Positions 29,922-48,158 of a stretch of DNA of 64,000 nt are shown here, piece by piece. The notes under the pieces were generated by a model. It was not told where the DNA came from. It saw only the letters and a list, made by a program, of their open reading frames with translations, and did no database searches. The stretch lies in the IMG/VR virus record IMGVR_UViG_3300045125_000168, positions 172,431-236,430 of that record. One strand, given 5' to 3'. The stretch's first letter is position 1, and every line of letters starts with the position of its first letter. The position numbers and the translations under genes are program-made.

Positions 29922-30078
29922 AGCTATGGGCAAGATTCTAGTGCGAAACATGATAGGCGACGAAAAAATATATGCGACAGAGGCTTCAGACCCAGAGGTC
30001 ATCAAAGCCGAGGTATTCCGTTGGTGGGCTATGCCCGGAGTCACAAAAGTCCAGGTCTTAGATGACGAGGAGTAGGTG

Positions 30079-30545
30079 ATGTTTTTGAAAAGGCTTGCGA
30101 TGAAAATCATCGCTATGGATTTTGGAGCGTATCTCGACCCACTCACGAAGCATAGCCTTATCAATGCACCCCTTTGTCCGACTATGTAAAAAATTTAACG
30201 CCCGATCAATTTGCCAAAGACTCGTATGCCGAAAAGGTATCGAGATATCCTAAAAATAAGAAAACCAAGCATAAGGGAGACTCGTACATTATATACGAGG
30301 CGGGCCAAAGAGATCCCATGGACCCTTTTTCCAAGAAAAGTTTTGACCGACTGGTGGAAGAGACGGAAGGGCCGACAGAAAACTCTTTAGTGTCAACCTT
30401 GAGCTTCTTGAGCCCGTGGATAATCCATCCGAGCCTAGTGGTGAGAATCCATCGTATCCGCAAGCGGCTTTGTGGTGGCAAAAGGGTCTCTCTTAAGGAA
30501 TCGAACTTGACAGATGACAACTTAGCTTGTTCAATTAAAAATTGA
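30079..30545 (+). CDS. Hypothetical protein; frameshifted
   Basis: MFLKRLAMKIIAMDF... joins ORF 30174-30545. Confidence 0.45.
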
Positions 30546-30595
30546 TCCCAAAGATTTAATACTCGTTCTTTTCAGACCAAAAAAGGTTTAATGAT

Positions 30596-32113
30596 ATGTC
30601 GGGTTTTTTGTCTACTGGTGCTCTCCTTGAAGATACAGGCGCTCTCGTTGCTTCAGAAACACCGATTGTTCTGACGCCTCAAAGTGCGACGATTCTGCAT
30701 CTATCAGGTGAGGGTATTGTAGGCACCGATCAGGTCTTGCGCCTACCCGATGCAACAAAACTACAGCCTGGGGTCCGTTACACGTTGCCAACCGTTCCGG
30801 TGTGGCGGCTGAGGTCCAAAACAATTCCTCTGAGAGTTTTGCCAAGATTGAGCCTGGGATGCAGGCGGAGTTTCGTCTACTCGATGGGGATACCTCAGCG
30901 GGACTTTGGGATGCCTCTATTTTCCCTAGCGTCAAGGTGGGAATTGAAGACCTTAACCTTTCTCTTCTCAAGGGTGGAACTTGGTCCTGGTCGGAGGGGA
31001 AACTTTCCATTACAGCAGATGCGTTTGTCCAGATTCCTGGACTTCCGCTTTCAGTGAACCGGATTGCTAAGTTTCCAGATGTTGCCGCGACAGAGTACAC
31101 GCTGCTCGGTGATGTTTCGGGCTCTCTGAACAATAAATATGTGACTATCAAACGACCCAGTGGGTCGGGATATTACTTCTGGTTCAACGTCAATGGCCTG
31201 GGGTCGGACCCTGGACCTTTTACCTCTTTATCTGGCGTAGAAGTTCCGCTTTCGACAAACGCCAACCTCATAACGGTGTTGACCTCTCTGAAAAGTGCGA
31301 TCGAGGGATCTCAAGCCAACGCCTACTTTACAGTGACGCAAAATCCTTCGACTCTGACGATTGAAAATAAAGAGGCTGGTAAGATTATTCTCCCGAAGTA
31401 TCTGCAAATTTCTCTTGTTCTTTTCTTAACAGTGGACAGGATAGCATCGCTCTCCCTAGTGAAGGTTATGCAGCGTACACTAAGATTAGAAGAAGTGAGA
31501 ACATCGCAGTTTCTGGAACGCCTTTGACCGTTGAGATCGTCTCATCGCCTGAGTTGCTGGATGCGAGTGATGCTGATTTATGGATACTGGCTCAAAACAT
31601 CGGATCGAACAGAGTCCTGGTTGGCAATTCTTTTCGGTTAGTGGATGGTCAATCAGACGAACTTTTTCCGCAGGTGCTGCGAAAGGGAGTATTTTAGGTT
31701 CTGTTCAATATAACGATGGAAAGGATTTACTGAGTGGTGATACTTCTTTAGTTTGGAATCCCATACAGAAGACGCTTCGTTTAGGTGACCTTCATGTTAC
31801 CAGTTTGACGCCTACCCTTACGCTACTTGATAACCAGTCTACTCCCGTACAGATCGCAACATTTGATCCGTCCGCTTACAAAAACCTAGTCTTAGAATAC
31901 TCTTTGATCCGCAACGGCAAGCCTCAGATGGGGCAACTTTTGATTGTTCATGACGGAGTTACTGCATCGCTTGCGGATAATTTCGTCGCGATCAATTCTG
32001 TGGGGATTGAGTTTCTAGCAGGTATCGAAGGTTCCTCTCTAGTGCTTGCCTACCAATCGACCTCTACAGGTCATGACGCTACTCTTCGTTACTCCATGCG
32101 CTACTGGTCTTAA
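30596..32113 (+). CDS. Virion structural protein; three fragments
   Basis: C-terminal domain LEYSLIRNG...QMGQLLIV...L.Y.ST is homologous to the C-termini of the five downstream fibre paralogs. Confidence 0.6.
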
Positions 32114-32199
32114 AAAAGACCGCAAAAATCAGCAACTCCTAAGTCGCTTTTAGAACTGCGCTTCTAAAAACATTTACATTTTTTTTGGAGTTAAAACGC

Positions 32200-34427
32200 A
32201 TGAGTAAGAACGTCTTAAAACACAACGTACCCCTCCGCTTTGGCACCGCTTCCTCTGACCCAGCCCAGACAGAAAACGGCGTTATCTACTATAACACAAC
32301 AGACAACCTTTTCAAGGTTTATGAAAACTCCCAATGGGTGAAGCTCGCAAGCCGCACCTATGTTGACTCCGTGGCCGCAGGTTTCGACCCGAAAGAAAGC
32401 GTCGTCGCTTCTTCGACCGCTAACCTCGCAAGCCTTGCTTCCATCGGGTCCTCTTTGGACGGCGTTTCGCTTTCCAACGGTGACCGCGTTCTTTTGAAAG
32501 ACCAGTCCACTGCGTCTCAAAACGGTATCTACGTTTACACCAGTGGTTCCTTGGCTCGTTCTGTTGACTTCAACGATAGCACGGAAGTCAACGGTGGTGA
32601 GTATGTGTTCGTGAAGGGCGGTTCTCTTTGGGGTGCAACCGCTTGGGTTGTGACCAACGCTCCTGCCACCATCGGTGTTAGCGACATCGTTTTCACGCAG
32701 GTTGCTGGTGCAGGCAAGTCCTTGAACAGCGCCTACCTCACGGGCAACAGCATCTCCACTAGCGGTGGCAACAACGTCATCATCGCTGGTACGGAGAAAC
32801 TGCAAGTCACGGCAAGCAGCGGCGTGTCCATCACCAACGCTCTTACCGCAGGCGCTACGGTTTTGACCAGTGCTTCCGTTACCGGAGCTTTGAGCGTTGG
32901 CGCTGGTAAGTTGATCGTTGATAGCAACGGTAACCTCACCAAGATCAACAACGTCTCCTATAGCTTCCCTGCAACGCAAGCCTCTGGTTCCAACTACGTT
33001 CTCCGTAACGATGGCTCGGGCAACCTCACCTGGAACAGCCTGCGTCTCGATAACATGAACGACCTGCTCTTGACCAGCTTGTCTGATAAGCAAATCCTCC
33101 GTTATGACTCGGCTTCCTCTAAGTGGAAGAATGAGTCTGCTATTTCCTCGACCTCTGGCTCTGCTTCTGCGTCCAAAATCATCATGACCAACTCTAGCGG
33201 TCTGTTGGACACCTCCTTCCTGCAATACAACGTCAACCTCGGCAACAACATTCTTTCTGGTGTCGCAACCCCAGTGGCTTCTACTGACGGTGCGAACAAG
33301 GCTTACGTTGACGCCTTGACCCTCAACACTGTTTACGGTCAAGACCCCGATGGTAGCGGTGCAACCATCACCACCAACTCGACCGATGGTGACGTGATTA
33401 TCGCTGGTACGCAAAAGCTGCAAGTCACGGCTTCTGGCGGTTTGGACGTGACCAACTCCATGACCGTTGGTAGCAGCGCCTCGATCGCTCAGTCCTTGAG
33501 CGTGGCGGGTGCTAAATTTGTGGTTAGCTCCACGGGGACCTGACCAAGATCAACAACGTCTCCTACTCTTTCCCGTCCGCTCAAGCAAGCGGTGCTAACT
33601 ACGCTCTCGTGAACAACGGCAGCGGAACCTTGACCTGGAACACCTTGTCCCTGTCTGGGTTGAGCGACGTCGCCCTTGCAAGCCTTGCTGATAAGCAAAT
33701 CCTGCGTTATAGCTCCACTGCTGGTAAGTGGGTGAACGAAAGCCCGATCGGTTCTACCACTGGTATCGCCGATGCGAGCAAGATCATCATGACGGATGCC
33801 TCTGGCAAACTTGATAGCTCGTTCCTGCAATACAATGTCAACTTCGGTGGTAACATCCTTTCTGGTGTTGCAACCCCAGTTGCCTCTAACGATGCCGTCA
33901 ACAAAGCCTACCTTGATTCCATCGTGGCTAACGCTGTTGCTGGTGTAACTCTGCAAACCGTGTACGAGCAAGACACCAACGGTGGTGACGTTCTCATCAC
34001 CACGAACTCTGTGGACGGAAGCCTTGTCATCGCTGGTTCCGAAGCCCTGAAAGTTTCGGCTGCTGGTGGTTTCAAACTGGCTGATAGCTCCGACGCAACC
34101 AAGTTCGTCCAGTCTATCTACAAAGATAGCTTGGCTCTTTCCGTTGGCTCTAGCGTTCTTTCCGCTCTCACCTACCCTGCTGCATCCATCGGCGGGATGA
34201 TGGTTGAGTACCGTGTGAAAGAAGCTGCTTCGGGTCGCGTTCGCGTTGGTACACTCCTCGTAACCAGCACCAGTGCTGATGTCTCCGTTTCCGATACCTT
34301 CGTTGAAACTGCTGATTGCCGACTGTCGTGGTCCGGTGCCATCAACGCTGGAAACGTGGAATTGTCCTACACCAAGACATCTGACTCCGCAAGCATGAGC
34401 GTCGAAGTTAAGAAGTTCATGGCCTAA
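32200..34427 (+). CDS. Fibre-like virion protein, paralog 1 (no variable insert, internal duplication)
   Basis: LKHNVPLRFG..ENGVIYY..FKVYEN, DGV.L..GDRVLLKDQ..QNGIY, EVNGGEYVFVK; one indel near 33540; strong codon bias. Confidence 0.8.
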
Positions 34428-34438
34428 TTTTTGATTTA

Positions 34439-34474
34439 GATAGCATAAGGGTTTCGGCCCTTATGCTATCTTTC
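34439..34474 (+). terminator. Intrinsic terminator-like hairpin after paralog 1
   Basis: GATAGCATAAGGG-TTTCGG-CCCTTATGCTATC followed by TTT. Confidence 0.75.
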
Positions 34475-34535
34475 CGCCCCTCTTTTGCTCCTAGACCTCT
34501 TTATTAAAACAATAATCCCCTTAAGGAGTATAAAA

Positions 34536-37350
34536 GTGAGTGACATAAAACTTATTAAGCACGGTGTACCCGTGCGGTTCGGGAAGGCAGGCGAAGCCCC
34601 TCCTCTCCCGAAAATGGGATGATATACTACGACACCTCTGAAGAACTTTTCAAAGTTTATGAAAATAGTGGATGGCAGATCCTTTCCTCCCGCGACTATG
34701 CGGATTCCCGTGTTGCTGGTTTTGACATCAAAGAAAGCTGCGCAGCAGCGACGGTCGAAGGACTTACAGCCACCTATGCTAATGGCACCTCTGGCGTTGG
34801 CGCGACCCTCACGGGTGCTGGGGCGCTTCCCTCCATCGATGGTGTCAGCCTTGCTCTCAATGCTAGGGTTTTGGTCCGTGCGCAAGGTGATGCGGCTCAA
34901 AACGGTGTCTATAAAGTTACGGCTTTGAGCCCTTTTGTTCTCACTAGAGCCGTAGATTTTGATGATTCTACTGAAGTGAACGGTGGTGAGGTCGTTTTCA
35001 TCAAAGAAGGAACGACCTTCGGAAACTGTTCTTTTGTGTGCCTCAGTTCCTCCGTTACCTTCGGCACCACTGCCATCAGCTTCACGCAGATCAGTGGTAC
35101 CGCAAGAACCTTGCAACAATATTACGCCACAGGGAACCAGATCACGACTGGTGACTCCCGTGACGTTATCATCGAAGGCTCCGAAAAACTTGAAATCACT
35201 GCCTCTAACGGTATGGAGATTTCTGGTTCGTTGTCCGCAGGTGAGACGCTGCTTTCTAGCGCAAGCGTCACCAATGCTATGGACGCAGCCGCAGCAAAGT
35301 TCTCCATCAGCAATGCTGGTAACATCAAAAAGTTGAATAATGTTTCGGTCAGCTTCCCAACATCTGCTTCCCAAGAAAACTTTGCGCTCGTCAATGACGG
35401 TTCTGGCACACTCTCTTTCGGTAACCTAGCTGTTAGCAATCTGAATGATGTCGGCCTAGCTAGTCTAAGCAGTGGTGAATTTCTTGAATACGATGCTGCA
35501 ACTAATTCCTGGGTCAATGACAATCCTGCTACCACCGCTTCCGGCTCTACATCGGTTGACTATTTACGATTGCCACCTGGCATGAGTGAAGATCCCGCAA
35601 TTTATAATGGTTACGCATTCGGTCTGATAGGTGATGGCTTACTAGGAGGACAGCAGATTGGTGGTGTATCTGGTCCACTAACGCAAGCATTTTTTTTGGT
35701 TCAAACACCATACAACGCAAGTCCATTACCTACGGGAACTATCCAAGTTGAGCTTTATGCAACGTCCAGCCAAAATGGACAGCTATTACCCACAGGGTCT
35801 CCTCTTGCTGTTTCTAACACTTATGATGTGTCCCAAATTGTGCCTGGGTACGTGCGAAATGAAGCCTCTTTTACTTTTTCATCTCCCGCACTATTGTCTA
35901 GTGAAAACGTCTATGCATTGATGATTCGCAGTAACAACGTGGCACAGGAAAGTTGGCAAAGCCCTGGCGTTTTGCAAGATCATAACGACTTTTTATACAC
36001 GCCATACTTAGCTATTCAATACGATGGTATGAGTATGAGTCTAGTTACTATGCAAAGTAGGAACCTTTTTTTCAAGATTGTTTTGGGTGGCACTGTTTCT
36101 GACAGTCTTGTCACAACAGACACAAATGGAAAAATTGATAGTAGTTTTCTGCAATTTAGTGGCCTGAGTTTGGGTGGTCACGTCATCTCTGGCATTGCAA
36201 GCCCAAGCGTTTCGACTGACCTTGCGAACAAGGCTTATGTTGATAGCGTGAGCTTGCAGGCTCTTTATAATCAGGACACCGATGGTCTTGGTGCCATCAT
36301 CACGACCGATGCTTCGGACGGTGATCTTATCATCGAAGGAAGTGAGAAATTGCATATTACCGCTGATAGCGGTCTTGACCTCGCTCAGATCCTTTCGGTC
36401 TCCGGTTCCATGGTTGCTGGAAGCCTTGTTGCCGGAAACGGCAGCATGAGCGTCTCTGCTTCGGGAGACCTTGGGAAGATCAAGGGCGTGTCTTATGTCT
36501 TTCCCGCCAGTCAAGCCACGGGTAGCAACTATACCCTGGTGAATGACGGTTCTGGGAACCTTAGCTGGGGTCAGCTAAAAGTTTCCGAAATGAACGACGC
36601 CCTTGTTTCCACGGCTTCCAACCAAGAGATCATTCAATGGAATGGCTCTAACTGGGTGAACGTCAGCGCCGTGACCTCTGGTAGTTCTAGCCGTATGTTC
36701 ATGACAACACCGAACGGTCGTCTCGACACGGTGGCATTGCAGCATAATCTCGATTTCGGGGTAAATGTTTTATCTAACATTCTTGCCCCAGTTGCCAGTA
36801 CCGATGCTGTTCCTAAATATGTTGCTGACGATAAAGCTGCGGACTCTTCTTCCGGTACGGGTTCGGTCACTCTACAATTATCTTACGGTCAAGATGTAGA
36901 TGGTAGTGATGTTCTTATCACAACTAACTCCGTAGATGGAATCCTTGAAATTGCAGGTTCTGAGGCTTTCCTCGTCAGTGCTGGAAAAGGATTCTTGCTC
37001 GCCGATAACGCCGATGCTTCTAAGTTTTCTAAGGTGATTTACAAGCATGAACTCGCCCTTTCGGCAAATCAAAGCAACGTCGCTTTAGCCGATGTGACTT
37101 TCGATTCCACAGTTCATCAGGGATGTTTGATCGAATATCGTATCAAAGATGATACCTCGGGTGCCTCTCGTATCGGTCTTCTTCTTGTTTCGACAGATGG
37201 AACGAACACGACGATCTCCGATTCCTTTGCAGAAACGTCTCCTCTTGGTGTTTCCTGGTCTGTTGGCCTTGCAGATGGAGATGTCGAGGTTCGTTATACA
37301 ACGAACTCTACCTCCAAAAGATGTCTGCAAAAATAAAATATTTTGCTTAG
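34536..37350 (+). CDS. Fibre-like virion protein, paralog 2
   Basis: GTG start after AAGGAG; same N- and C-terminal modules as paralog 1; unique insert about 35520-36100; indels near both ends. Confidence 0.8.
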
Positions 37351-37357
37351 TGTCTGT

Positions 37358-37384
37358 GGGGTTCCCCTCAAGGGGAACCCTTTT
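37358..37384 (+). terminator. Intrinsic terminator after paralog 2
   Basis: GGGTTCCCC-TCAA-GGGGAACCC followed by TTTT. Confidence 0.75.
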
Positions 37385-37388
37385 AAAA

Positions 37389-37459
37389 GAAACTATAGAT
37401 ACCTTTCATACGATCATTTCAGTTAAAAACCCGATGAAAGGATTGCGATATGACCGATA
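37389..37459 (+). promoter_or_regulatory. Conserved 5' leader with a stem covering the RBS (copy 1)
   Basis: CCTTTCAT...ATGAAAGG inverted repeat includes AAAGGA; nearly identical to 40352-40422. Confidence 0.6.
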
Positions 37460-40309
37460 TTTTATTACTTAAGCACGATGTTCCCCTGCGTTTTGTTCAG
37501 TCTAGTGCGGCACCAGCATCACCAGAAAACGGGATGATCTATTACGATACGACCCTGAACCTCTTTAGGGTCTATGAAAACGGTCAATGGCAAGCCCTTT
37601 CGTCAAGGGACTATGCCAAAAATTCAGTCGCCAGTTTTGATGTCAAAGAAAGCTGCGAAGTTGCAACCATCGCAAGCATCACTGCGACTTACGATAACGG
37701 GTCTGCTGGGGTCGGTGCGACCCTAACAGGAGCAGGGGCTCTCGGCTCGATCGACGGTGTGAGCCTTTCCGTGGGCGACCGAGTTTTGGTGCGTTCCCAG
37801 GCTAATGCTGCGGAAAACGGTATCTACAAATTGACGGCAGCAAGCCCTTTTGTACTGACACGAGCCGTAGACTTTGATGACTCCATCAAAGTGAATGGTG
37901 GAGAGTTTGTCTTCGTTAAGAATGGCACAAATTACGGTAATTGTGCTTTTGTATGTATCAATTCCTCTGTGACCTTCGGTTCCACGGCCATCAACTTTAC
38001 ACAGATCAGCGGTACAGCAGCGACCCTGCAACAATATTATGCGACCGGAAACCAGATTAACACGAGTTCTGGACGTGACGTTATTATCCAAGGTTCTGAA
38101 AACTCGAAATCACGGCTTCTGATGGCATGGAAATTTCTGGGTCTTTATCTGCGGGTCAGACCGTTTTGTCTAGTGCTAGTGTGACCAACGCTATGGACGC
38201 AGCAGGTGCTAAATTCGAGATCAATGACGCTGGTAACATCAGAAAGCTAAATAACGTACCCGTCAGCTTCCCGATCTCTGCATCTCAAGCCAACTATGCT
38301 CTTGCGAACGATGGTTCGGGGACATTGAGCTTTAGCAATCTTTCTGTTGCCAACCTTAATGATGTTGACGTTAGTGGTGCAACATCAAATTCGATGCTCC
38401 GGTATGACTCGCTTTCTTCCAAATTTGTGATGAGCGATGCAATTCTCGCTGGTGGGATGGGTGCTCCAACAAATTCTTTGCTGCTAAACGGTCTCGAATC
38501 ATCGTTTGCGACTTCGAGTACGTTAGAAAATTACCCATACATGGTTTCCGGCGAAAATATAGCCCAAGGGATCTCGGGATATTATTCTGTCGGACATGCT
38601 ACAGGAGCGCGGTTTGAGGTAACATCATCAACTTCGATTTCAAGTATTGATCTGTGGTTGCATACTTTAGATCAAGGCCCTGGTCAATTTCGCATCGCTA
38701 TCTTTAATTTTAATCCTGTAAATAGAACAGTAGGTAGTGAAATTGCTACGACTGCTGTTTTTGGTCAAAGCACTATTTACTTGCCTTGGCCACAGTATAC
38801 TTATGATATCAAAGGGAACAGCAGCACTCCTTGGCCTGTTATTAACTTTTCTTTTACAACTCAACCTGTGTTGTCTCCAGGTTACTATGTTTTTGGTATT
38901 ATCATCGTTACTCAGCCTAACGCACCTATCGCTCTTGCAGGTATTTCAACAGGGTCTTTGATTGGTGAGACCTGGGAATCTGGTTTAGATGCCTCTAGCA
39001 ACGGTCTTGGTTCAGGGTATGTTGCGGCACGAATCAATCAAAGCGTGGCTGACACTTCGACTGTGAATGTCCTGATGAGGACTAATGTTGCTGGAAAGAT
39101 CGACAGCAGTTTTCTGCGAAACGTCAACCTCGGTGGCAACATTCTTTCGGGAGTGGCTAGTCCCTCTGTGTCTAGCGACCTAGCAAATAAGGCATACGTT
39201 GATAGCGTGAGCTTGCAGGCTCTTTATACTCAAGATGTTGACGGGCTTGGAGCAATCATCACCACCGATGCTTCGGACGGTGATCTTATCATCGCAGGTA
39301 GTGAGAAATTGCACATCACTTCCGATAGTGGGCTTGATTTATCGGAAATCCTTTCGGTGTCCGGCTCTATGGTTGCAGGAAGCCTGGTTGCCGGGAACGG
39401 TAGTATGAGCGTCTCTGCTTCGGGAGACCTTGGTAAAATCCAAGGTATTTCATACTCCTTCCCTGCAAGCCAAGCCCCTGGCAGCAACTATGCCTTGGTT
39501 AATGATGGCTCAGGGAACCTTAGCTGGGGTCAGCTAAAGTTTCTGAAATGAGCGATGCGCTCGTCTCCACGGCCTCCAACCAAGAGATCATCCAGTGGAA
39601 CGGTTCTAACTGGGTGAACGTCAGTGCGGTGACCTCTGGAAGCTCCAGCCGTATGCTGATGACCGATAGCAGCGGTCGTTTGGATACCTCGAACTTGCAA
39701 TACAACGTCGATTTTGGGGCGAATGTTTTATCTAGCATTCTCGCTCCAGTTGCCAGTACCGATGCTGTTCCTAAATATGTTGCTGACCAAAAAGCTGCGG
39801 ACTCATCTTCCGGTACAGGATCAGTCACCCTGCAATCATCATATAATCAAGATGTAGATGGTAGTGATGTTCTCATCACAACTAACTCCGTAGATGGAAT
39901 CCTTGAAATTGCAGGTTCGGAAGCACTCAAGATTAGTTCATCACAAGGCTTCTGCTTGCAGATAGTTCTGACACCACCAAATTTGTAAAAACTATCTATA
40001 AACATAGTCTTTCTCTTTCGGCAAGTCAGACCAACACGGCGTTGCCTGATCTTACTTTTTGACCCTTCGGTATATCAAGGTTGCTTAATCGAGTACCGCA
40101 TCAAGGACGACGATTCTGGTGCATCAAGACTCGGTACGCTCCTGGTTTCCTCCAACGGGACTTATACTGCGGCTTCTGACTCGTTCGCTGAAACATCGGA
40201 TCTCGGGGTGTCGTGGTCTGTTGCGCTCAATAGCGGGAATGTAGAAGTCCGTTACACAACGGATTCTACAACCAAGAAGATGTCCGCTCAAATTAAGTAT
40301 TTCGCCTAG
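37450..40309 (+). CDS. Fibre-like virion protein, paralog 3; several fragments
   Basis: MTDILLLKHDVPLRF...; unique insert about 38440-39060; ends KKMSAQIKYFA*. Confidence 0.8.
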
Positions 40310-40322
40310 AGGTATCTATAAA

Positions 40323-40345
40323 CAGGGGCTTTTTTGAAGCCCCTG
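40323..40345 (+). terminator. Hairpin after paralog 3
   Basis: CAGGGGCTT-TTTTG-AAGCCCCTG. Confidence 0.6.
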
Positions 40346-40351
40346 CACAAA

Positions 40352-40422
40352 GAAACTATTGATACCTTTCATACGATAATTTCAGTTAAAAACCCGATGA
40401 AAGGATTGCGATATGACCGATT
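40352..40422 (+). promoter_or_regulatory. Conserved 5' leader with a stem covering the RBS (copy 2)
   Basis: GATACCTTTCATACGAT..TTTCAGTTAAAAACCCGATGAAAGGATTGCGATATG, as upstream of paralog 3. Confidence 0.6.
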
Positions 40423-43373
40423 TTTTATTACTTAAGCACGATGTTCCCCTGCGTTTCGGCACATATAGCGAGGCACCACAGTCGCCTCAAAACGGGATGA
40501 TCTATTATGATACGACCCTAAACCTTTTCAGGGTCTATGAAAACGGTCAATGGCAAGCCCTTTCTTCAAGGGACTATGCAAAAAATTCGATCGCAAGTTT
40601 CGATGTCAAAGAAAGCTGCGAAGCTGCAACCACTACCAACCTTTCTGCGACCTACGCCAACGGCACCTCAGGTGTCGGTGCGACCCTAACGGGCGCGGGG
40701 GCTCTTCCTTCCCTCGATGGGGTGAACTTATCAGTTGGAAAAAGAGTTTTGCTTCTTGGGCAAACGGCAGCGAAAGAGAATGGTGTCTACACCGTCACTG
40801 CTCTCAACCCTTTTGTTTTAACCAGGGCCGTAGACTTCGACGAATCCGAAGAAGTGAATGGCGGTGAGTTCGTTTTTGTTAAAAACGGAACGAACTACGG
40901 AAATTGTGCATTCGTTTGTACAAACTCTGGGCCAGCGACCATCGGGACAACAGCGATTGTCTTTACTCAGATATCAGGTAATGCAAGAACACTTCAGCAG
41001 TATTATGCGACGGGCAACCAGATTGATACCGCTTCAGGAAGAAATGTTATCATTGCTGGAACAGAAAAATTAGAAGTCACCAGTTCTGGAGGTGTGGAAA
41101 TCACCGGAGCGTTGTCAGCGGGCGCAACAATTCTATCGACAGCATCTGTTCCTGAAGTGATGAGTGTGGCGAGCGGCAAGTTGGCAGTCAACTTGAATGG
41201 TGACATTACAAAATTAAATAATGTTGCAATTACTTTCCCATCTTCAGCCTCGATGGCAAACTATGCACTCACCAACAATGGTTCGGGTAGTCTGCGTTTC
41301 AGTAATTTATCCGTTCAAAACATGAATGATGTAACACTAACATCATTATCGAATGGCGATTATCTTCAATATACAACTAATGGAAATTGGTTAAATAAAT
41401 TTGCTCTTGAAACCGGGAACCGAAATGTTGTCGTAGCCACATCGTCCTCAATACCAATCGGTGTTAATAGTGCTTGGGCTGGTGACAACGCGATACTTGA
41501 CAATATTAACAACGCCAACTTTGTTCAATGTCAATCCATCTCGAACGCCTCTTGGTTATCTTGAATCGATTGATTATTGGATACAAAGACTCGGCAATTT
41601 TACGTCTTCTGGGACTATTCATGCGTGTATCATGGAATATCTAGGTGGTGGATCTAGTGTTTTAACCAACTTTGTTCCACCAAGCCAACTTTTGACCCCA
41701 CCCCCAAAATAGAAAATGCACTAGCTGTCAGTGCTCCTTTTGATGTTACAACTATCCCATCAGGATATTCAAGTAACCCTTTCGAGGTATAGATTTTATT
41801 TTACAGGTGCCAATCAAATCCAGTTAAATCCTGCTAAGACTTATCTTATCTGGCTTATAAAGTCCACAGGACTTGAATATGTCGCGGATCTATATAATGG
41901 AAATACATTTTCCGTTCACTACACATTGCTTTCCGACAATCCATACGCAAATGGGAAAATGATTACTTTCGCTTTTCAGAGACAGTATGACTATACGATT
42001 TCGAGTGCAATCTGGTTTGATCCCGCTCGCATAGGGGCGGGGACGACCACTTATCCGAATTATGATATTAAAATGCAAGTCAATACACTGTCGGCTACTA
42101 AGAACTCCGTAATGTATTCAGGTGTCTTCAAAACTAATGCCGCGGGTCTTTTAGATAATTTCTTCCTCGAATCAAATCTCAATTTGAAGAACAATGTTAT
42201 TTCTGGAATTTCCAATCCATCGGTCTCAACAGATCTTGCTAATAAAGCCTATGTTGATGCAGCAGTTACTCTTCAATCCCTTTACAACCAAGATCCTGAT
42301 GGTTCCGGTGCGACTATCACGACAACTACCACAGATGGTGCGCTCATTATCGGAGGAACGGAAAGGTTACAGGTCACCGCGTCCAGTGGTGTTTCTGTCA
42401 GCCAAATTCTTTTGGTATCTAGCTCAATGACGACAGGAACCTTGACCGTTGGCAACGGTGGTTTGGTCGTGTCCTCTGCGGGAACACTTACAAATATAAA
42501 AGGTGTTTCGTACAACTTCCCAGCAACCGATGCTGCTAGTGCCAATTTAGTTCTTTTCAATGATGAAGCTCGGGAAATTTAAGTTGGAGCGATCCTCAGC
42601 TTGCAAAGTCTGCTGTGATGACGAGCTTATCTAATGGTGACGTACTCGTTTACAACGGGACGAGCACTAAATTTGTGAATAAAGCACCAGTTACCAGCGG
42701 AACAGCAAGAACCCCTCTGAGGTCTGACGCCTTGGGTTTTGTTTCTTCCTCGGCACTCCAGTATAACGTCAATTTTGGAACCAACATTCTCTCCAGCCTC
42801 AGTTCGGCTGTTCAAAGTAGTGACGTGGTAACGAAGGCTCAGGTTGATGGACAAACGATCGATCCTAGTGCAGGTATCGGTTCGCTGACGCTGAAAGTTC
42901 TATACGACCAAGACACTGAGTTCACACCGAATGTCGTTATAACTACATCCTCTAGTATGGGTGCGCTTGAAATCGCAGGAAGCGAAGACTTTAAAGTCTC
43001 GTCGAATCAAGGGTTTTTACTAGCCTCCAGCGTTTCTGACGACAAGTTCACGAAATCTATATACAAACATGGCCTGACGTTATCTGCAAATCAAACCGAT
43101 ACCAGCGCTTTCAGCCCTTACCTTCAGTGCTTCATCCTATAAGGGCTGCGTCATAGAGTACCGTATTAAGGACACAGATGGCGTTTCCAGAGTCGGGACC
43201 ATTCTGGTGTCAGCGGATGGTAGTACAGACGTTGACCTGTCTGATAGCTTTGTTGAGACATCACCTCTTGGTCTCACTTGGGATGCTGTAGTGTCGGGGA
43301 CAAACGTAGAAATTCATTATACAACCAATTCTCGGCAAAAACCATGAGCGCGGTCATCAAGTATTTCATGTGA
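40413..43373 (+). CDS. Fibre-like virion protein, paralog 4; several fragments
   Basis: Same scaffold modules; unique AT-richer insert about 41400-42110; ends MSAVIKYFM*. Confidence 0.8.
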
Positions 43374-43393
43374 AGGGATTGATGGCTACTATT

Positions 43394-43441
43394 GGATACC
43401 TTTCATATTACACTAAAATGCTGAAAGGATTTGCATATATG
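43394..43441 (+). promoter_or_regulatory. Diverged copy of the RBS-covering leader
   Basis: GATACCTTTCA-tattacactaaaatgc-TGAAAGGAT: the stem is kept while the loop differs. Confidence 0.55.
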
Positions 43442-46400
43442 GCCAGCAAAAAATTATTAAAGCACGGTGTTCCGGTTCGCTTTGGCACTTATGACGCGCC
43501 ACCGCCTAACCCTGAAAATGGGATGATCTATTACGATACATCGTTAGGTTTTTTCAAAGTTTATGAGAATGGGTCATGGCAGTCCCTTTCTTCCAGGAAT
43601 TATGCAAAGTCGATCTTTGCAGGTTTTGATATTAAAGGAACATGCAAGGTTGCCTCGGTTGAAAATATAGATTTAGCAGGTGGAAGTCTTACGTTTAGTC
43701 GTATCTACACAACGCAAAATGGTGGCGGAAGTAACGCGGCTGCTGGTATCGGTTTTAATCGATACGCTTTTTCTGTGCCCTCTGGGCAGACATATTCTAT
43801 TGGTAAATTCAGTGTTTGGATGGCTAAAGTTGACAACCCTGGCCAACCTGATGCCTTTTTGAGAATATATTCTCAATCATCTGGTGGCAGTCTTCTAGGG
43901 ACATCGGCCACAGTTGCAGCTAGTACAATTCCTCTAAACACTCAGCAGTGGTCGTTTATTGATTTTATCTTTCTCAACACCAGTAGTTCTTACATCTGGG
44001 ACGTACTACTTCAGTGTTCAAGACTTTTCTGATCCAAATAATGGAATACCTTACTACGGTGTTCAGTTCTTCTGGAATCCGCCTACGGATTGGAATGCAG
44101 GGCCAAACTATAAAATATGGGGTGCGCAGCCCCCATCAACCATTGACGGATACAATCTATCAAATGGTGATCGAATCCTTTTGAAGGATCAAACTAACGC
44201 CGCGCAAAATGGCATATATGTGTACTCCGCTCAAACTCTGACTCGCTCCGCTGATTTCTCTGATGGTGATATGGTCAATGGTGGTGAATATGTTTTGGTT
44301 TCAAATGGTAGCAACACATTTTAGCAGCGTTTTTATATGTACAAATTCATCTCAAGCTACTATAGGCACAACTCCGATCACATTCACACAGTATACGAGC
44401 CCTGCTCGGTCCCTACAGCAACACTATTCTGTTGGTGGCCAAATTACGACAAGTGGTGGTAGAGATGTAATAGTTGCAGGTACTGAAAAGCTACAGATCG
44501 AAGCCGCAGGTGGTTTGCAGATTACAAACTTCTTATCCGCAGGTCAAACTCTTGTCCCAACGGCGAGTGTCTCTGGAAGTGCAAACGTCGGTGCTGGAAA
44601 ACTTGTTATTGGTTCCGATGGTAATATTTCTAAAATTCGTAACGTAACCTCTATCTTCCCAACTTCTGCCTCGCAAGCAAATTACGCGCTGACAAACAAT
44701 GGTGCAGGAACTCTGAGTTTTGCCAACCTCGCTGCTTTCCAATCTAAACGATGTGACGCTCACGTCTACATCGAGCGGTGACTTTTTACGATATGATAAT
44801 GCAACAGCTAAATGGGCGAATAGGATTCCATTGAAAAAATGCTACCGTTTCTCTGCAAAACGTAGTTAATTACTATAACACAAACGGTACATCAGGTTCT
44901 AACTCATATTATGCTATCAACTCACCATATTCCCCGAACATCTATTCATCAATTGCAGCGCGAATCTGGTATGTCGAAGGATACCTTAAAAGCGTGAAGG
45001 TAACAGTTCGGGTGAATAGTCCTAACTATGATACTGCCGTTTACGCTTATATTACGGAATGGACCGGAACATCGACTAGCGAGCCACCAACGGGGGCTCT
45101 TGCAAAAGTATCAACTACCTGTCCCCATCTACAGACAATGTGGTTGTTGGTTCCGACTATATTAAGACGTTTAATTTTCCAGAAACATATCTCAGTAACA
45201 CGAAAGAATATCTCATAGTCCTCGTCAGTAATTACAACCCCAGTGCATATCAAATCAAGCTCAACGCTCTCGGGGACTTGTATGGCGGTCAAGGTATGTG
45301 GCTTAAAAAGTCAGTCTGGACTAAAGACATCGCAGGTTATCCAGTGATGCAATTAGTCGTGAACTCCGAGCCTTCTGCGGCCATCGATGTAATCCAGACC
45401 ACCGCCTCTGGTTTTTTAGATAAATCGTTTCTCTACAACGTAAATCTCGGAAATAACATTATATCAGGGATTTCATCTACGGCAGTTTCCACGGACCTTG
45501 CGAACAAGGCTTATGTCGATTCTGTCAAATTTCAAGATCTTTACAATCAGGACCCCGATGGCTCTAATGTAACTATTACGACGAATAGTATAGACGGTGC
45601 GCTTGTTATTGAAGGAACTGAGAAACTGCAAGTCACTGCGTCTAGCGGTGTTTATGTTAGTAACGCACTTACGGCTGGATCGTCTTTGAGTGCTGGAAGT
45701 CTGGTGGCAGGCAACGCAAGCATGAGCGTGTCCGCAGCGGGTAATCTCACCAAGATATCTGGGTGTCTTACAGCTTGCCCTCAAGTCAAGCTGCAAGCGA
45801 TAACTACCTAATGGTAAACGATGGCTCTGGGAATCTCAGTTGGGCTAACTTCAATTTCGACCAGATGAGTGACACGATTGTCACTGATGTTTCCGACTTC
45901 CAAGTCCTTCGTTTTGACGGAACTAACTTTGTCAACGTCAACACGGTTCTGAGTGGTGGCGCGAGTCAAATCCTCAGAACTGATGCGTCGGGTCATCTTG
46001 CTAGTGAAGCCTTGCAGTACCCATTGACTTTAGTGGGCAACACCCTGACGGGCGTTGGGATGGCTGTGGGCAGCAGCGACATGGTGTCCAGGGCGTATGC
46101 TGATGCAAACGCGATTGATACAGGGATCAACACAATCAACCTCAACTCGGCTTATCACTACGGTCCAGTTCTGACTACCAATTCCACCGATGGTTTCCTG
46201 GAGATTACGGGTTCGGAATCCCTTGAAAGTGTCTGCGAGCTTCTGCCTCTAGCAGATAGCAGCGACGACACCAAGTTTTCCAAGGTCTTCTACAAACACG
46301 GGATTACCCCTCTCGGCCAATATGACCTCGGCTATTCTGAACGACCTGACGTTCTCAAGCGCCCTCTATCAGGGCCGTGTCATCGAGTATCGCATGAAGG

Positions 46401-46604
46401 ACAATTCTCTGGGCGACTCTCGTGTGGGAACCTTGATGCTTTCTACCGATGGTACAAGCACCTCGATTTCTGAGCACGTTTGCTGAGACCGCACCGATGG
46501 GCGTGACCTGGGCCGCAACGATGGCTGAAAATGACGTCCAGGTGCTCTATACGACCAACTCGTCGTCCAAAATCCTGAGTGCTAAAATCAAGCTTTTTGC
46601 CTAA
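43439..46604 (+). CDS. Fibre-like virion protein, paralog 5 (two variable inserts); many fragments
   Basis: MASKKLLKHGVPVRFG...; inserts about 43670-44130 and 44820-45370; ends LSAKIKLFA*. Confidence 0.75.
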
Positions 46605-46622
46605 GCAAGTGAGCTCTGTGAC

Positions 46623-46656
46623 AGAGGTGACCTACAACGGTAGGCACCTCTTTTTT
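46623..46656 (+). terminator. Intrinsic terminator closing the fibre array
   Basis: AGAGGTG-ACCTAC-AACG-GTAGG-CACCTCT followed by TTTTT. Confidence 0.75.
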
Positions 46657-46728
46657 GAGTGACGTTTTGTAAAGATCGGTCTAAGCTCTAATCCAGACCA
46701 TTCCAAAAAACTTCAAAGAGACTACTCC

Positions 46729-47650
46729 ATGGGCGTTATCGACCTTGAGAATTTTGATAAATTGCCACCTGACATGCAGGAACAGTTTGCCGAACTCTTG
46801 AAGCAACATCCACACCTAGACTCTAAGCTCAAGAGTCCTGCTCATGAACTTAATACTCCAACGAAGCTCGCTGAAGACGACGAGAACGAGATCGACTACA
46901 GCAACATGAGCTTGGACGATATTCCCCAACCCCAGTCCTCTCGCCCCAAAACCCCGACCCTCAGGTTTCAACGGGAGTATGATGAGGAAGCGGAGGCTCA
47001 AAAAGTCGAAGCGGAAACGAAGAAAAGTCAACAGCAAAAGAAAGAAGTGCCTCCTCCTCAACCACCGCATGTGGCGAATTTTTCACCAGTAGGCAAACAG
47101 CACCCCGTCCTGAAAAAGCTCAGGGCGTCCTTGGGGCTGGGAGTCTATCAAAAGTCTTTCGTTGCCGAGGTTGGTGGCCTCAGCTATGAGATGCTGCCAC
47201 TATCACGGGATGCGATGACCCAGCGGTCACCCTTGCCGCAACCAATAGCGTCAATGACACTGAATTTCGGGCCAACCAGGACGTGGCCATTATCGCTTTT
47301 TCGATCCAAAAATAGATCAGGTTCCTCTCGTGGACGTTTTCTCGATTGCCGATCATGAATTTGACCAAAAGGGAACTCCATCCCCTTGACCTCTTGGCAA
47401 CGCAAGAAAAAGCCGCCAACCCTTCTTCTACGAGTTGAAAGATAGCCCTCCAGAGTTGGCCGATGCGCTTATCAACTATTATCAACAAGAGTTTCCACCT
47501 AAAAACCTGTTGGCCGAAAACAAGATTACCGCTTACTGCCCTGAGGCAAACTGCACCTATCAAAGAATCCTGGACGAGGAAGAAGAGGGCTTCTGCCCCT
47601 ATCATGGTACTCAGTTAGCGAAGGAGTCGGATTTACCGAACCCTTTTAGT
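46729..47650 (+). CDS. Putative tail assembly chaperone; frameshifted
   Basis: Acidic/Pro-rich N-terminus, helical core and C-terminal CP...C...CPYHG; located upstream of the tape measure. Confidence 0.45.
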
Positions 47651-47855
47651 AGACCCCCTAAGAGCTTAATTATCATGACCCGGCTCTTGCTCGTCGCCTA
47701 CTCATCATGGCGCACTGGGGTCTAACACCAAAAGAGGTCGGTGATCTGTCTGACGCTGATATAGAGGTGTTGGAATACAGCTTCCTTTGCATGAAAGACG
47801 TCAAGCTGAGACCTAAGCGATATCAATCGGTTCACTCACCGGAACGTCCTGGCCT

Positions 47856-48158
47856 GTGGAGTCTCTTCTGAATGAAGGGAACCCGGATTTACAAAAGCCA
47901 AGATTCACTTGGAGCTTAAGACCTCCCAGGCAAAGAGTCTCAGCACCCCTGACCGTCGTCATGGCGGGAGGTCAACTGATCGCGGATCTGAAGAAGCAAG
48001 CCAGTGCAATCAATCTCAAGAATCGTGAGAATCCTGCAATCCTGTCTCGTCCTGTTGGTGACCTTCTCAAGAAGGGTGAAAAGATTGAAATAGTTGAACT
48101 AGGGATGAAGTCGAAAGAAGAGTTCCTTGGGTTCATTCGCTCTCATAACTTGGGATAA
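47856..48158 (+). CDS. Hypothetical protein
   Basis: 100-aa ORF immediately before the tape measure. Confidence 0.45.
   Translation: MESLLNEGNPDLQKPRFTWSLRPPRQRVSAPLTVVMAGGQLIADLKKQASAINLKNRENPAILSRPVGDLLKKGEKIEIVELGMKSKEEFLGFIRSHNLG

What the first reader, a model, noticed from the sequence alone, without database searches (positions are those of the whole stretch)
32200..46604. Five-gene tandem fibre array with constant ends and exchangeable central modules
All five paralogs share the N-terminal LKHxVPxRF/NGxIYY/EVNGGE block, the repeated LYxQDxDG...ITTxSxDG..IxGxExL shaft unit and the C-terminal EYRxK...GTLLV...Y domain. Paralogs 2-5 carry mutually dissimilar beta-rich inserts (two in paralog 5). 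Paralog 1 has none and shows the strongest codon bias. Inference: a modular adhesin system in which one abundant plain fibre is supplemented by variants with different specificities, possibly as mixed trimers or interchangeable occupants of one virion site.
Basis: partly seen in the sequence, partly recalled or inferred. Interest (0 to 1): 0.68.

Follow-up and report, generated by a model that had tools for sequence, protein, structure and literature searches.

The report
Phage fibre array with swappable inserts
A large uncultured phage carries five neighbouring copies of a three-stranded fibre gene with the same two ends but different middle modules, which probably widens what the virus can stick to; the genes look broken only because of sequencing errors.

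Summary
The five-paralog array is real and lies exactly at 32200-46604 on the + strand. None of the five is an intact reading frame. I count 21 single-base frame breaks (1, 2, 4, 6 and 8 in P1 to P5). They sit mostly at homopolymers, are half insertions and half deletions, and leave no in-frame stop once corrected. Neighbouring genes are broken the same way, and relatives have intact, colinear genes. I therefore read the breaks as assembly errors, not decay.

Each protein has a 50-aa N-terminal motif and a roughly 140-aa domain also found in the Legionella phage LME-1 tail fibre. About 2.3 copies of a ~190-aa shaft unit follow, then a C-terminal beta-sandwich knob. The knob is folded like the T4 gp9 C-terminal domain and is predicted to trimerise.

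P2 to P5 carry orphan beta-rich modules at one fixed site, and P5 has a second. These modules are 8-25% identical to each other. Between P5 and its ortholog the flanks are 70-96% identical but the central module only 12-31%.

P1 has no insert. It shares the major head protein's codon usage and evolves slowest.

Tail or head location and binding function remain untested.

The parts
30596..32113 (+). Upstream gene. It is 514 aa and intact in relative L002/L004, but split by 3 frame breaks here. Its last ~110 aa are homologous to the fibres' C-terminal knob; it lacks the fibre N-terminus.
   Evidence: tblastn of the L002 514-aa protein; alignments A2 and A5; domain HMM hit
32200..34427 (+). P1, the plain fibre, 742 aa, no insert. 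One frame break at 33538-33539. GC3 0.62, ENC 42.
   Evidence: ortholog P0123 is 742 aa, 82% identical and gap-free
34536..37350 (+). P2, 938 aa. GTG start behind an AAGGAG ribosome-binding site. Breaks at 34605 and 37319.
   Evidence: the 905-aa ORF 34619-37336 is the database protein P0001
37450..40309 (+). P3, 953 aa. Four breaks, near 38101, 39537, 39953 and 40057-40060.
40413..43373 (+). P4, 986 aa. Six breaks. The three inside the insert (about 41520, 41683, 41778) were placed only approximately.
43439..46604 (+). P5, 1053 aa. Eight breaks plus two probable compensating ones at 46222-46250. Ortholog of P0004.
35543..36085 (+). P2 central insert (insB), 181 aa
   Evidence: alignment and domain map
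38457..39050 (+). P3 central insert (insB), 198 aa. Orphan: no relative among 1.84 billion representative proteins.
41421..42102 (+). P4 central insert (insB), 227 aa
43688..44138 (+). P5 N-domain insert (insA), 150 aa. 45% identical to the same insert in ortholog P0004.
44847..45367 (+). P5 central insert (insB), 174 aa. Only 21% identical to that of ortholog P0004.
34107..34424 (+). P1 C-terminal knob domain, 106 aa. Equivalent domains lie at 37028-37347, 39985-40306, 43050-43370 and 46279-46601.
   Evidence: AF2 model with pLDDT above 90 over the domain; T4 gp9 C-terminal domain Z 10.9; homotrimer prediction
32347..32718 (+). P1 copy of the widespread ~140-aa fibre domain (Ndom). Equivalent domains follow the 50-aa N-motif in P2 to P5.
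   Evidence: profile A1 against PDB: LME-1 tail fibre 9EFK orf22 residues 236-385, E 1.3e-43
34438..34471 (+). Strong stem-loop after P1 (-23.6 kcal/mol). Similar ones lie at 37358-37381 (followed by U-tract), 40323-40345 and 46623-46651 (followed by U-tract). None lies between P4 and P5.
37395..37449 (+). Conserved leader upstream of P3, repeated at 40358-40412 (P4) and 43392-43438 (P5). It holds a 7-nt inverted repeat that can pair with the ribosome-binding site.
   Evidence: D5 repeat at 88% identity

Best explanation
The locus is the main cluster of a family of homotrimeric virion fibre genes. The host genome is a large (at least 236 kb) uncultured phage that probably has a contractile tail.

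Architecture. All members share a 50-aa N-terminal motif (inferred to be the virion-docking end) and a ~140-aa fibre domain. A shaft built from ~190-aa repeat units follows, then a C-terminal beta-sandwich knob that holds the trimer together.

Variable modules. In one clade of the family (P2 to P5 here) a loop of the first shaft unit carries an extra beta-sandwich module. This module projects sideways from the shaft. It is replaced or diverges far faster than the rest of the protein. I infer it is the variable binding module, probably for surface glycans.

Roles. P1 has no such module and uses the codons of the major head protein. It is the abundant, conserved default fibre. P2 to P5 are lower-expressed variants that dock the same way and add specificities.

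Frame breaks. The 21 breaks are errors of a long-read assembly. The real genes are intact.

Shown: the paralogy, the domain map, the intact orthologs and the insert replacement between orthologs. Predicted by models, not measured: the knob fold and the trimer. Inferred: docking by the N-terminus, binding by the inserts, relative abundance, and attachment to the tail rather than the head.
For: Paralogy and domain map.

Frame breaks are errors:
- 18 of 21 lie next to a run of 3 or more identical bases, against 49% of random positions. 9 of 21 lie next to a run of 4 or more, against 15%.
- 11 are missing bases and 10 are extra bases.
- No in-frame stop remains in about 4,650 codons after correction.
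- Alignments to intact relatives run straight across each break.
- The unrelated upstream gene and an HNH gene are broken the same way.
- The contig is number 066 of a JGI metagenome and is 351,605 nt long.

Intact relatives and arrays: the SRR19514065 contig carries five tandem called genes. Three of them are confirmed family members: P0123 (742 aa), P0002 (753 aa) and P0003 (950 aa). The 506-aa gene may be the counterpart of the upstream knob gene; it and the 931-aa gene were not compared. The ERZ27292242 contig carries a gene of more than 1014 aa followed by P0004 (1041 aa).

Insert replacement. Insert loss in P0002, inside the insert-bearing clade.

N-domain homology to the LME-1 tail fibre. 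PHROG tail fibre, head decoration and virion protein families.

Knob: AF2 pLDDT above 90 over the domain. T4 gp9 C-terminal domain Z 10.9, rmsd 2.2 A over 105 residues. Fri1 gp49 tailspike C-terminus Z 10.1. Cyanophage tail-fibre-like and virion proteins match in BFVD.

Trimer: ipSAE 0.95 against a best control of 0.00, in 3 runs with 97% contact agreement and pLDDT 94. In the tool's calibration this mark was reached by 20 of 30 proteins solved as pairs and 1 of 23 solved as single chains. Those counts hold only roughly here, because my own alignment and three copies were used.

P1 expression proxy: ENC 42.2 and GC3 0.62, against ENC 42.1 and GC3 0.61 for the major head protein.

Contractile tail: a Baseplate_J match in the genome.
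Against: - No direct evidence of virion association, binding or expression.
- The insert fold is not established. AF2 gave mean pLDDT 45.7, and the best structural match, a CBM at Z 6.5, is within noise.
- No sequence family matches the inserts.
- The N-domain also occurs in a capsid decoration protein (9NX3, E 4.7e-7) and in PHROG head-decoration families. Codon usage like the head protein would fit a high-copy capsid fibre at least as well as a tail fibre.
- A variable module in the middle with a constant distal knob is the reverse of the usual tail-fibre layout, where the tip varies.
- IMG/VR labels the record a provirus. That leaves a small chance that the breaks are real.
Confidence: 0.5

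Rival explanations
1. These are the same proteins, but they are capsid or sheath 'hair' fibres rather than baseplate receptor-binding fibres. Many equivalent sites would be filled by whichever paralog is available, mostly P1. The insert-bearing variants would act as loose adhesins.
For: P1 codon usage is the same as that of the major head protein, as expected for a high-copy component. The N-domain matches a solved capsid decoration protein (9NX3) and PHROG head-decoration families. At least seven members share one N-terminal motif, which is many for six baseplate sites. Jumbo phages with capsid fibres (PTm1) or hairy tails (Y3) are known (PMC13282480).
Against: The best solved homolog of the N-domain is a tail fibre (LME-1, E 1.3e-43). 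The knob fold matches tail-fibre, tailspike and baseplate proteins. The array is not next to the head gene, which lies about 55 kb away.
Confidence: 0.3
2. The frame breaks are real. The array is a decaying set of pseudogenes in a defective prophage.
For: IMG/VR classes the record as a provirus cut from a 351,605-nt contig. Breaks increase along the array: 1, 2, 4, 6, 8.
Against: There are no in-frame stops and no larger deletions, and alignment to intact orthologs is colinear and gap-free. Breaks are enriched at homopolymers and split evenly between insertions and deletions. Other genes show the same defect. Break counts only loosely follow homopolymer density: 7.2 runs per kb in P1 against 12-15 per kb in P2 to P5. 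Codon bias is preserved in P1.
Confidence: 0.04
3. The paralogs co-assemble into mixed trimers. One fibre would then display up to three different lateral modules.
For: The constant parts are similar (34-88% identity). The knob, which drives trimerisation in the model, is 50-73% identical among P2 to P5.
Against: The paralogs are old: 66-77% DNA identity, and each is closer to its own ortholog than to its neighbours. P1's knob is only 34-45% identical to the others. The inserts differ in size at the same shaft position, which would strain a three-fold shaft. Known phage fibres are homotrimers (general knowledge). No heterotrimer was modelled.
Confidence: 0.08
4. The inserts are not binding modules. 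They could be structural spacers, assembly aids, or decoys under diversifying selection from host defence or grazers.
For: No binding family or fold was established. The conserved distal knob could be the true receptor-binding end.
Against: A fixed insertion site, a beta-rich composition and rapid replacement against conserved flanks are the pattern seen for carbohydrate-binding insertions in other phage tail proteins (general knowledge). The language-model neighbours of two different inserts are the same lectin-like and DUF4082 clusters, but both score below 0.9, so they are leads only.
Confidence: 0.08

Closest known systems
Tail fibre of Legionella phage LME-1 (PDB 9EFK, orf22; PMC12407071)
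   Same: It shares the ~140-aa domain that follows the N-terminal motif here (profile E 1.3e-43 to residues 236-385). It is a trimeric fibre, with six trimers per tail.
   Different: LME-1 is a T7-like podovirus with a single fibre gene and a T7-type N-terminal adaptor-binding domain. Here the domain sits right after a 50-aa motif. The rest of the protein (shaft units, inserts, knob) has no counterpart in the LME-1 match.
T4 gp9 C-terminal domain, and the C-terminal domains of Acinetobacter and Klebsiella phage tailspikes and fibres (1QEX, 6C72, 6E1R, 7XY1)
   Same: The C-terminal knob has the same eight-stranded beta-sandwich fold (Z 10.9, 10.1, 8.6 and 7.4). It sits at the C-terminus of a trimer.
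   Different: There is no detectable sequence similarity (8-18% identity, and no PDB hit by profile). gp9 is a baseplate connector, not a fibre. The tailspikes carry enzymatic beta-helices that are absent here.
Multi-fibre jumbo phages such as Klebsiella phiKp24 with hyperbranched fibres (PMC9700779, cited in PMC13282480), and branched tailspike sets of CBA120 and G7C (my own knowledge)
   Same: Several receptor-binding proteins are encoded side by side in one large phage, presumably to widen host range.
   Different: Those sets use different N-terminal docking domains to build a branched hierarchy, and they vary in the C-terminal catalytic or binding part. Here both ends are constant and the middle varies.
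'Evolved' Dit, Tal and BppA proteins of lactic-acid-bacteria phages, with carbohydrate-binding modules inserted in loops (my own knowledge)
   Same: A conserved structural scaffold carries beta-sandwich modules inserted at fixed loop positions. The modules differ between related phages.
   Different: Those are siphovirus baseplate proteins, not fibres. Their inserts belong to recognisable CBM families, whereas the inserts here match no family.
Hairy or capsid-fibred jumbo phages (Tenacibaculum PTm1, Erwinia Y3; PMC13282480)
   Same: Large phages with many copies of fibre-like appendages on the head or sheath. This would fit an abundant P1.
   Different: No sequence comparison with those phages was made. 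The location of the fibres here is unknown.
Bordetella phage BPP-1 Mtd and its diversity-generating retroelement
   Same: The first 50 aa resemble the motif found at the N-terminus of Mtd-type and HylP-type fibres (my recollection; not tested directly). Some proteins that share the N-domain carry PF18454. Both are variable receptor-binding trimers.
   Different: This genome has no reverse transcriptase and no template/variable repeat pair. Variation is by whole-module replacement, not mutagenic retrohoming.

Membership tests
Trimeric phage fibre or tailspike proteins with a gp9-C-like distal knob | C-terminal eight-stranded beta-sandwich domain of the T4 gp9 C-terminal type | tested here: met
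   AF2 model with pLDDT above 90 over residues 65-172. 1QEX residues 169-284: Z 10.9, rmsd 2.2 A over 105 aligned residues. 6C72 residues 642-772: Z 10.1.
Trimeric phage fibre or tailspike proteins with a gp9-C-like distal knob | Homotrimer | tested here: met
   Prediction only. Three copies of the last 172 aa of P1 scored ipSAE 0.95 against a best control of 0.00. Runs agreed in 97% of contacts, and pLDDT was 94. The shaft part is disordered in the monomer and becomes ordered and intertwined in the trimer.
Trimeric phage fibre or tailspike proteins with a gp9-C-like distal knob | Present in the virion | not testable with these tools
   Uncultured metagenomic phage. The only support is homologs and fold-mates annotated as tail fibre or virion protein.
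LME-1-type fibre domain (9EFK orf22 residues 236-385) | Significant profile match over the whole domain | tested here: met
   E 1.3e-43, profile positions 4-154 of 159.
Peptidase_S74 intramolecular chaperone C-terminus | PF13884 match at the C-terminus | tested here: not met
   No Pfam hit in any paralog fragment at E up to 0.1. The knob fold is a beta-sandwich, not the S74 fold.
DGR-diversified Mtd-type receptor-binding proteins | Reverse transcriptase plus a template/variable repeat pair | tested here: not met
   No RVT_1 match in the 236-kb record. The locus has no near-identical repeat pair; the best DNA repeats are 60-88% identical paralogous segments.
Invertible tail-fibre segments (Mu G, P1 C) | Inverted repeats flanking alternative C-terminal exons | tested here: not met
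   No inverted repeat pairs of 30 nt or more in 30000-48000. All genes are on one strand.
DUF4082 or lectin-like carbohydrate-binding modules (for the inserts) | HMM match, or a confident fold match | tested here: not met
   PF13313 finds nothing in the genome even at E up to 10. No Pfam hit. The language-model neighbours scored 0.83-0.86, so they are leads only. The AF2 model is too poor (pLDDT 45.7), and its best match is Z 6.5.
Branched multi-tailspike systems (CBA120, G7C, phiKp24 type) | Each receptor-binding protein has its own distinct N-terminal docking domain | tested here: not met
   The five N-termini are 48-84% identical over the first 83 aa.

The most novel reading that the evidence does not exclude
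This would be a fibre design in which host specificity is carried by orphan beta-sandwich cassettes plugged into one loop of a repeated shaft, not by the tip. The cassettes would be swapped between phages by recombination in the conserved flanks. All paralogs would compete through one shared N-terminal motif for the same virion sites. Each particle would then be a random mosaic dominated by the plain fibre, a built-in bet-hedging of adsorption specificity.
Probability: 0.2. Interest if true: 0.6.

Novelty: new variant of a known kind. Interest (0 to 1): 0.38.

Why it matters
Arrays of receptor-binding genes are how large phages widen or shift host range. Here the variable part sits at a fixed internal site between two conserved ends. 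That makes it a natural cassette system, and the recombination boundaries can be read directly from ortholog comparisons.

If the inserts are binding modules, they form a pool of new binding domains with no relatives among 1.8 billion representative proteins. The conserved scaffold could also serve as a chassis for swapping specificities in phage engineering.

The finding is also a caution. The public gene calls for this contig split each fibre into 2 to 5 pseudo-proteins because of homopolymer errors.

Tried and rejected
- Close relatives in cultured phages: none by DNA. By protein, only the N-domain matches.
- IMG/VR scans with one protein and with the C-terminal alignment: no relatives.
- Metagenome scan: four loci, two of them distant.
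- DNA of the two most informative relative contigs (SRR19514065, ERZ27292242) was not available. No dN/dS or breakpoint mapping at nucleotide level was therefore possible.
- P3 insert against 1.84 billion representatives: only itself and a chance hit to an Ig-repeat protein.
- hhalign between inserts, using tiny alignments: weak, best 38% probability.
- AF2 of the insert: pLDDT 45.7, unusable. The fold search on that model gave only generic jelly-roll and CBM matches with Z below 8.
- PDB profile searches for the shaft unit and the knob: nothing.
- Rejected after testing: Pfam S74, DUF4082, a DGR, invertible segments and Rfam elements.
- Recent gene conversion or assembly collapse between paralogs: rejected, because DNA identity is only 66-77%.
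- No alternative genetic code was used.
- Broken genes were joined only inside scripts, with X at each break. Only window references or intact database proteins were sent to remote tools.

Full report
WHAT THE SEQUENCE SHOWS

The window is the last 64 kb of a 236,430-nt IMG/VR virus record. That record was cut from contig Ga0494335_066, 351,605 nt long, of JGI metagenome 3300045125. PHROG matches in the genome include a major head protein, a head-tail connector, an exonuclease and a Baseplate_J wedge protein. Together they mark a large phage that probably has a contractile tail.

None is a continuous reading frame. The public gene calls split the region into 14 pieces of 35-905 aa. Following the homology from frame to frame, I find 21 single-base shifts. 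By gene they number 1, 2, 4, 6 and 8, with two further probable compensating shifts in P5 at 46222-46250.

THE BREAKS ARE ASSEMBLY ERRORS

- Of the 21 breaks, 18 lie next to a run of three or more identical bases, against 49% of random positions. Nine lie next to a run of four or more, against 15%.
- Eleven are missing bases and ten are extra bases.
- The three breaks inside the P4 insert were placed by eye at such runs, so they do not count as independent evidence.
- After correction no in-frame stop remains in about 4,650 codons. Real decay with this many indels would also leave nonsense substitutions.
- Alignments to intact relatives pass straight across each break. P1 aligns with its ortholog P0123 over 742 of 742 residues without a gap, at 82% identity.
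- The gene upstream of the array has 3 breaks and an HNH gene elsewhere has 1, relative to intact homologs on contig L002.

ANATOMY

Read through with X at each break, the proteins are 742, 938, 953, 986 and 1053 aa. Each has the following parts:

- A 50-aa N-terminal motif.
- A ~140-aa domain (Ndom).
- A first shaft unit of ~190 aa, a second unit, the first third of a third unit, and a 107-aa C-terminal domain.
- In P2 to P5, a 174-227 aa insert (insB) at one fixed point of the first unit.
- In P5, a second insert of 150 aa (insA) inside Ndom.
- P1 has neither insert.

The constant parts are 34-88% identical between paralogs, and P2 and P3 are the closest pair. The inserts are 8-25% identical to each other. 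At the DNA level the paralogs are 66-77% identical. They are therefore old duplicates, not recent conversions or assembly artefacts.

Strong stem-loops follow P1, P2, P3 and P5. P3, P4 and P5 share a conserved leader.

DOMAINS

Ndom is a widespread mobile domain of phage fibre proteins. It occurs at N-terminal, internal or C-terminal positions and sometimes two or three times in one protein. A profile of it matches residues 236-385 of orf22 of PDB 9EFK at E 1.3e-43. That protein is the tail fibre of Legionella phage LME-1 (PMC12407071). The profile also matches a solved capsid decoration protein, 9NX3, more weakly at E 4.7e-7. PHROG families hit by this part are annotated as tail fibre, head decoration or virion protein. 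No Pfam family matches any part.

The C-terminal domain folds confidently in AF2, with pLDDT above 90. Its best structural matches are the T4 gp9 C-terminal domain (Z 10.9, rmsd 2.2 A over 105 residues) and the C-terminal domains of Acinetobacter and Klebsiella phage tailspikes and fibres (Z 7-10). Among predicted viral structures it matches many cyanophage tail-fibre-like and virion proteins.

Three copies of the last 172 aa of P1 are predicted to form an intertwined trimer. The score was ipSAE 0.95 against a best control of 0.00, the runs agreed in 97% of contacts, and pLDDT was 94. In the tool's calibration that mark was reached by 20 of 30 proteins solved as pairs and 1 of 23 solved as single chains, counts that hold only roughly here. 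This supports a trimer but does not show one.

The shaft unit has no solved relative.

THE INSERTS

The P3 insert has no relative among 1.84 billion representative proteins, apart from a chance match to an Ig-repeat protein. Weak links connect the inserts to one another:

- P3 insB to P5 insA, E 1e-3.
- P0003 insB to P5 insB, E 5e-5.
- P0003 insB to P4 insB, E 1e-3.

hhalign on these tiny alignments reaches at best 38% probability. The AF2 model of the P3 insert shows strands only and has a mean pLDDT of 45.7, so I do not trust its fold matches. A protein language model places two different inserts nearest to the same two named clusters, lectin-like and DUF4082. The scores are 0.83-0.86, which makes them leads only. 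The DUF4082 HMM finds nothing.

My reading is that the inserts are beta-rich and probably share one very diverged origin. Their fold and function are not established.

RELATIVES

Full-length relatives are rare, on about seven short metagenomic contigs, and every relative gene recovered is an intact reading frame.

- One contig (SRR19514065) carries five tandem called genes of 506, 742, 753, 931 and 950 aa. The 742-aa gene, P0123, is the P1 ortholog. The 753-aa gene, P0002, is related to P2 and P3 but has no insert. The 950-aa gene, P0003, has an insert. The 931-aa gene was not recovered in either protein search. The 506-aa gene was not compared either, and I cannot say what either of them is.
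- Another contig ends with P0004 (1041 aa), the ortholog of P5. The two are 88% identical over residues 1-75 and 26-54% across insA. Identity then runs 62-96% up to the central insert, 12-31% across it, and 70-96% after it.

A tree of the constant parts has two well-supported clades. One holds only plain fibres. The other holds all the insert-bearing ones, with plain P0002 nested inside. The central insertion is therefore probably ancestral to that clade. It has since been replaced or has diverged beyond recognition, and it was lost once.

Between this genome and the SRR19514065 phage, P1 and P0123 are far closer (path length 0.11) than any pair from the insert clade (0.49 or more).

THE FAMILY IS LARGER THAN THE FINDING

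- The gene just upstream (30596-32113) ends in the same knob domain.
- An intact 944-aa plain fibre with 3.3 shaft units lies at genome 130385-133216 on the minus strand. A CAP-domain gene follows it, as in relatives P0125 and P0126.
- A further broken member lies at genome 125928-127911.
- More distant contigs carry tandem genes that combine the N-motif, Ndom and the knob with other middles.

EXPRESSION PROXY

P1 has GC3 0.62 and ENC 42.2. The only gene in the genome with matching values is the major head protein, at GC3 0.61 and ENC 42.1. P2 to P5 have GC3 0.41-0.44 and ENC 53-60.

INTERPRETATION

The evidence fits a family of homotrimeric virion fibres with a shared docking end, a modular shaft and a shared distal knob. 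One abundant plain member (P1) is accompanied by variants that display fast-changing lateral modules.

I commit to receptor or glycan binding by those modules as the most likely function, at about 0.5. The grounds are the fixed site, the beta-rich nature and the contrast between replaced modules and conserved flanks. This is inference.

Whether the fibres sit on the baseplate or decorate the capsid or sheath is open. I put the second option at about 0.3, because of the head-like codon usage, the capsid-decoration homolog and the number of members sharing one N-terminus. Mixed trimers are possible but unsupported.

A DGR, invertible segments and an S74 chaperone domain were tested and excluded.

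NOVELTY

Side-by-side receptor-binding genes in large phages are well known, for example phiKp24 in PMC13282480. Domain insertions into tail proteins are also known. The less usual features here are the constant knob combined with a variable middle, the orphan status of the modules, and the clear cassette behaviour between orthologs. I rate it a new variant of a known kind, of moderate interest, limited by an error-laden metagenomic contig and the lack of any functional data.

Noticed in passing
whole record; for example window 30596-32113 and genome 144780-146044: Frame breaks are not confined to the fibre array. The upstream gene has 3 and an HNH endonuclease gene has 1, relative to intact homologs on L002. 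The public gene calls for this contig are therefore fragmented throughout.
   Followed up: partly
genome 130385-133216 (- strand; L009:86-2917, L010:10383-13217): An intact 944-aa plain fibre of the same family with 3.3 shaft units and strong codon bias (ENC 47, GC3 0.58). A CAP-domain gene follows it. In relatives the positional counterpart (767 aa) follows an HSP20 gene.
   Followed up: partly
genome 125928-127911 (- strand; L010:5948-7912): Another broken gene with shaft-unit and knob homology. It is an eighth family member with a different N-terminus.
   Followed up: no
window 37395-37449, 40358-40412, 43392-43438: A conserved leader upstream of P3, P4 and P5 only; its 11-nt core occurs nowhere else in the genome. 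A 7-nt inverted repeat in it can pair with the ribosome-binding site, and the stem is kept in P5 although the loop differs. It may be a promoter or a translational control element.
   Followed up: partly
genome 148768-149904 (- strand; L008:69-1205): The major head protein gene (phrog_2522, E 7e-57). It is the only gene that matches P1 in codon usage.
   Followed up: yes
window end (64000), equal to contig position about 238,189: IMG/VR calls the record a provirus. About 113 kb of the 351,605-nt contig to the right of the window was excluded as host. Whether that is a true junction or a mis-trimmed jumbo phage was not examined.
   Followed up: no
window 32215-33423 and 33489-34460 (- strand): Long open frames (402 and 323 aa) lie antisense to P1. 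I take them for shadows of its strong codon bias, not genes.
   Followed up: no
L006 7238-15698 (ERZ1066132 NODE_4, 138,727 nt): A distant phage contig has four tandem genes (1048, 640, 689 and 303 aa). They mix the same N-motif, Ndom and knob with unrelated middles, so these end modules circulate more widely than the shaft units.
   Followed up: partly
L005 686-2845 and L007 3889-4572: Distant relatives carry a ~75-aa insertion at the same point of Ndom where P5 and P0004 carry insA. That loop is a recurrent insertion site.
   Followed up: no
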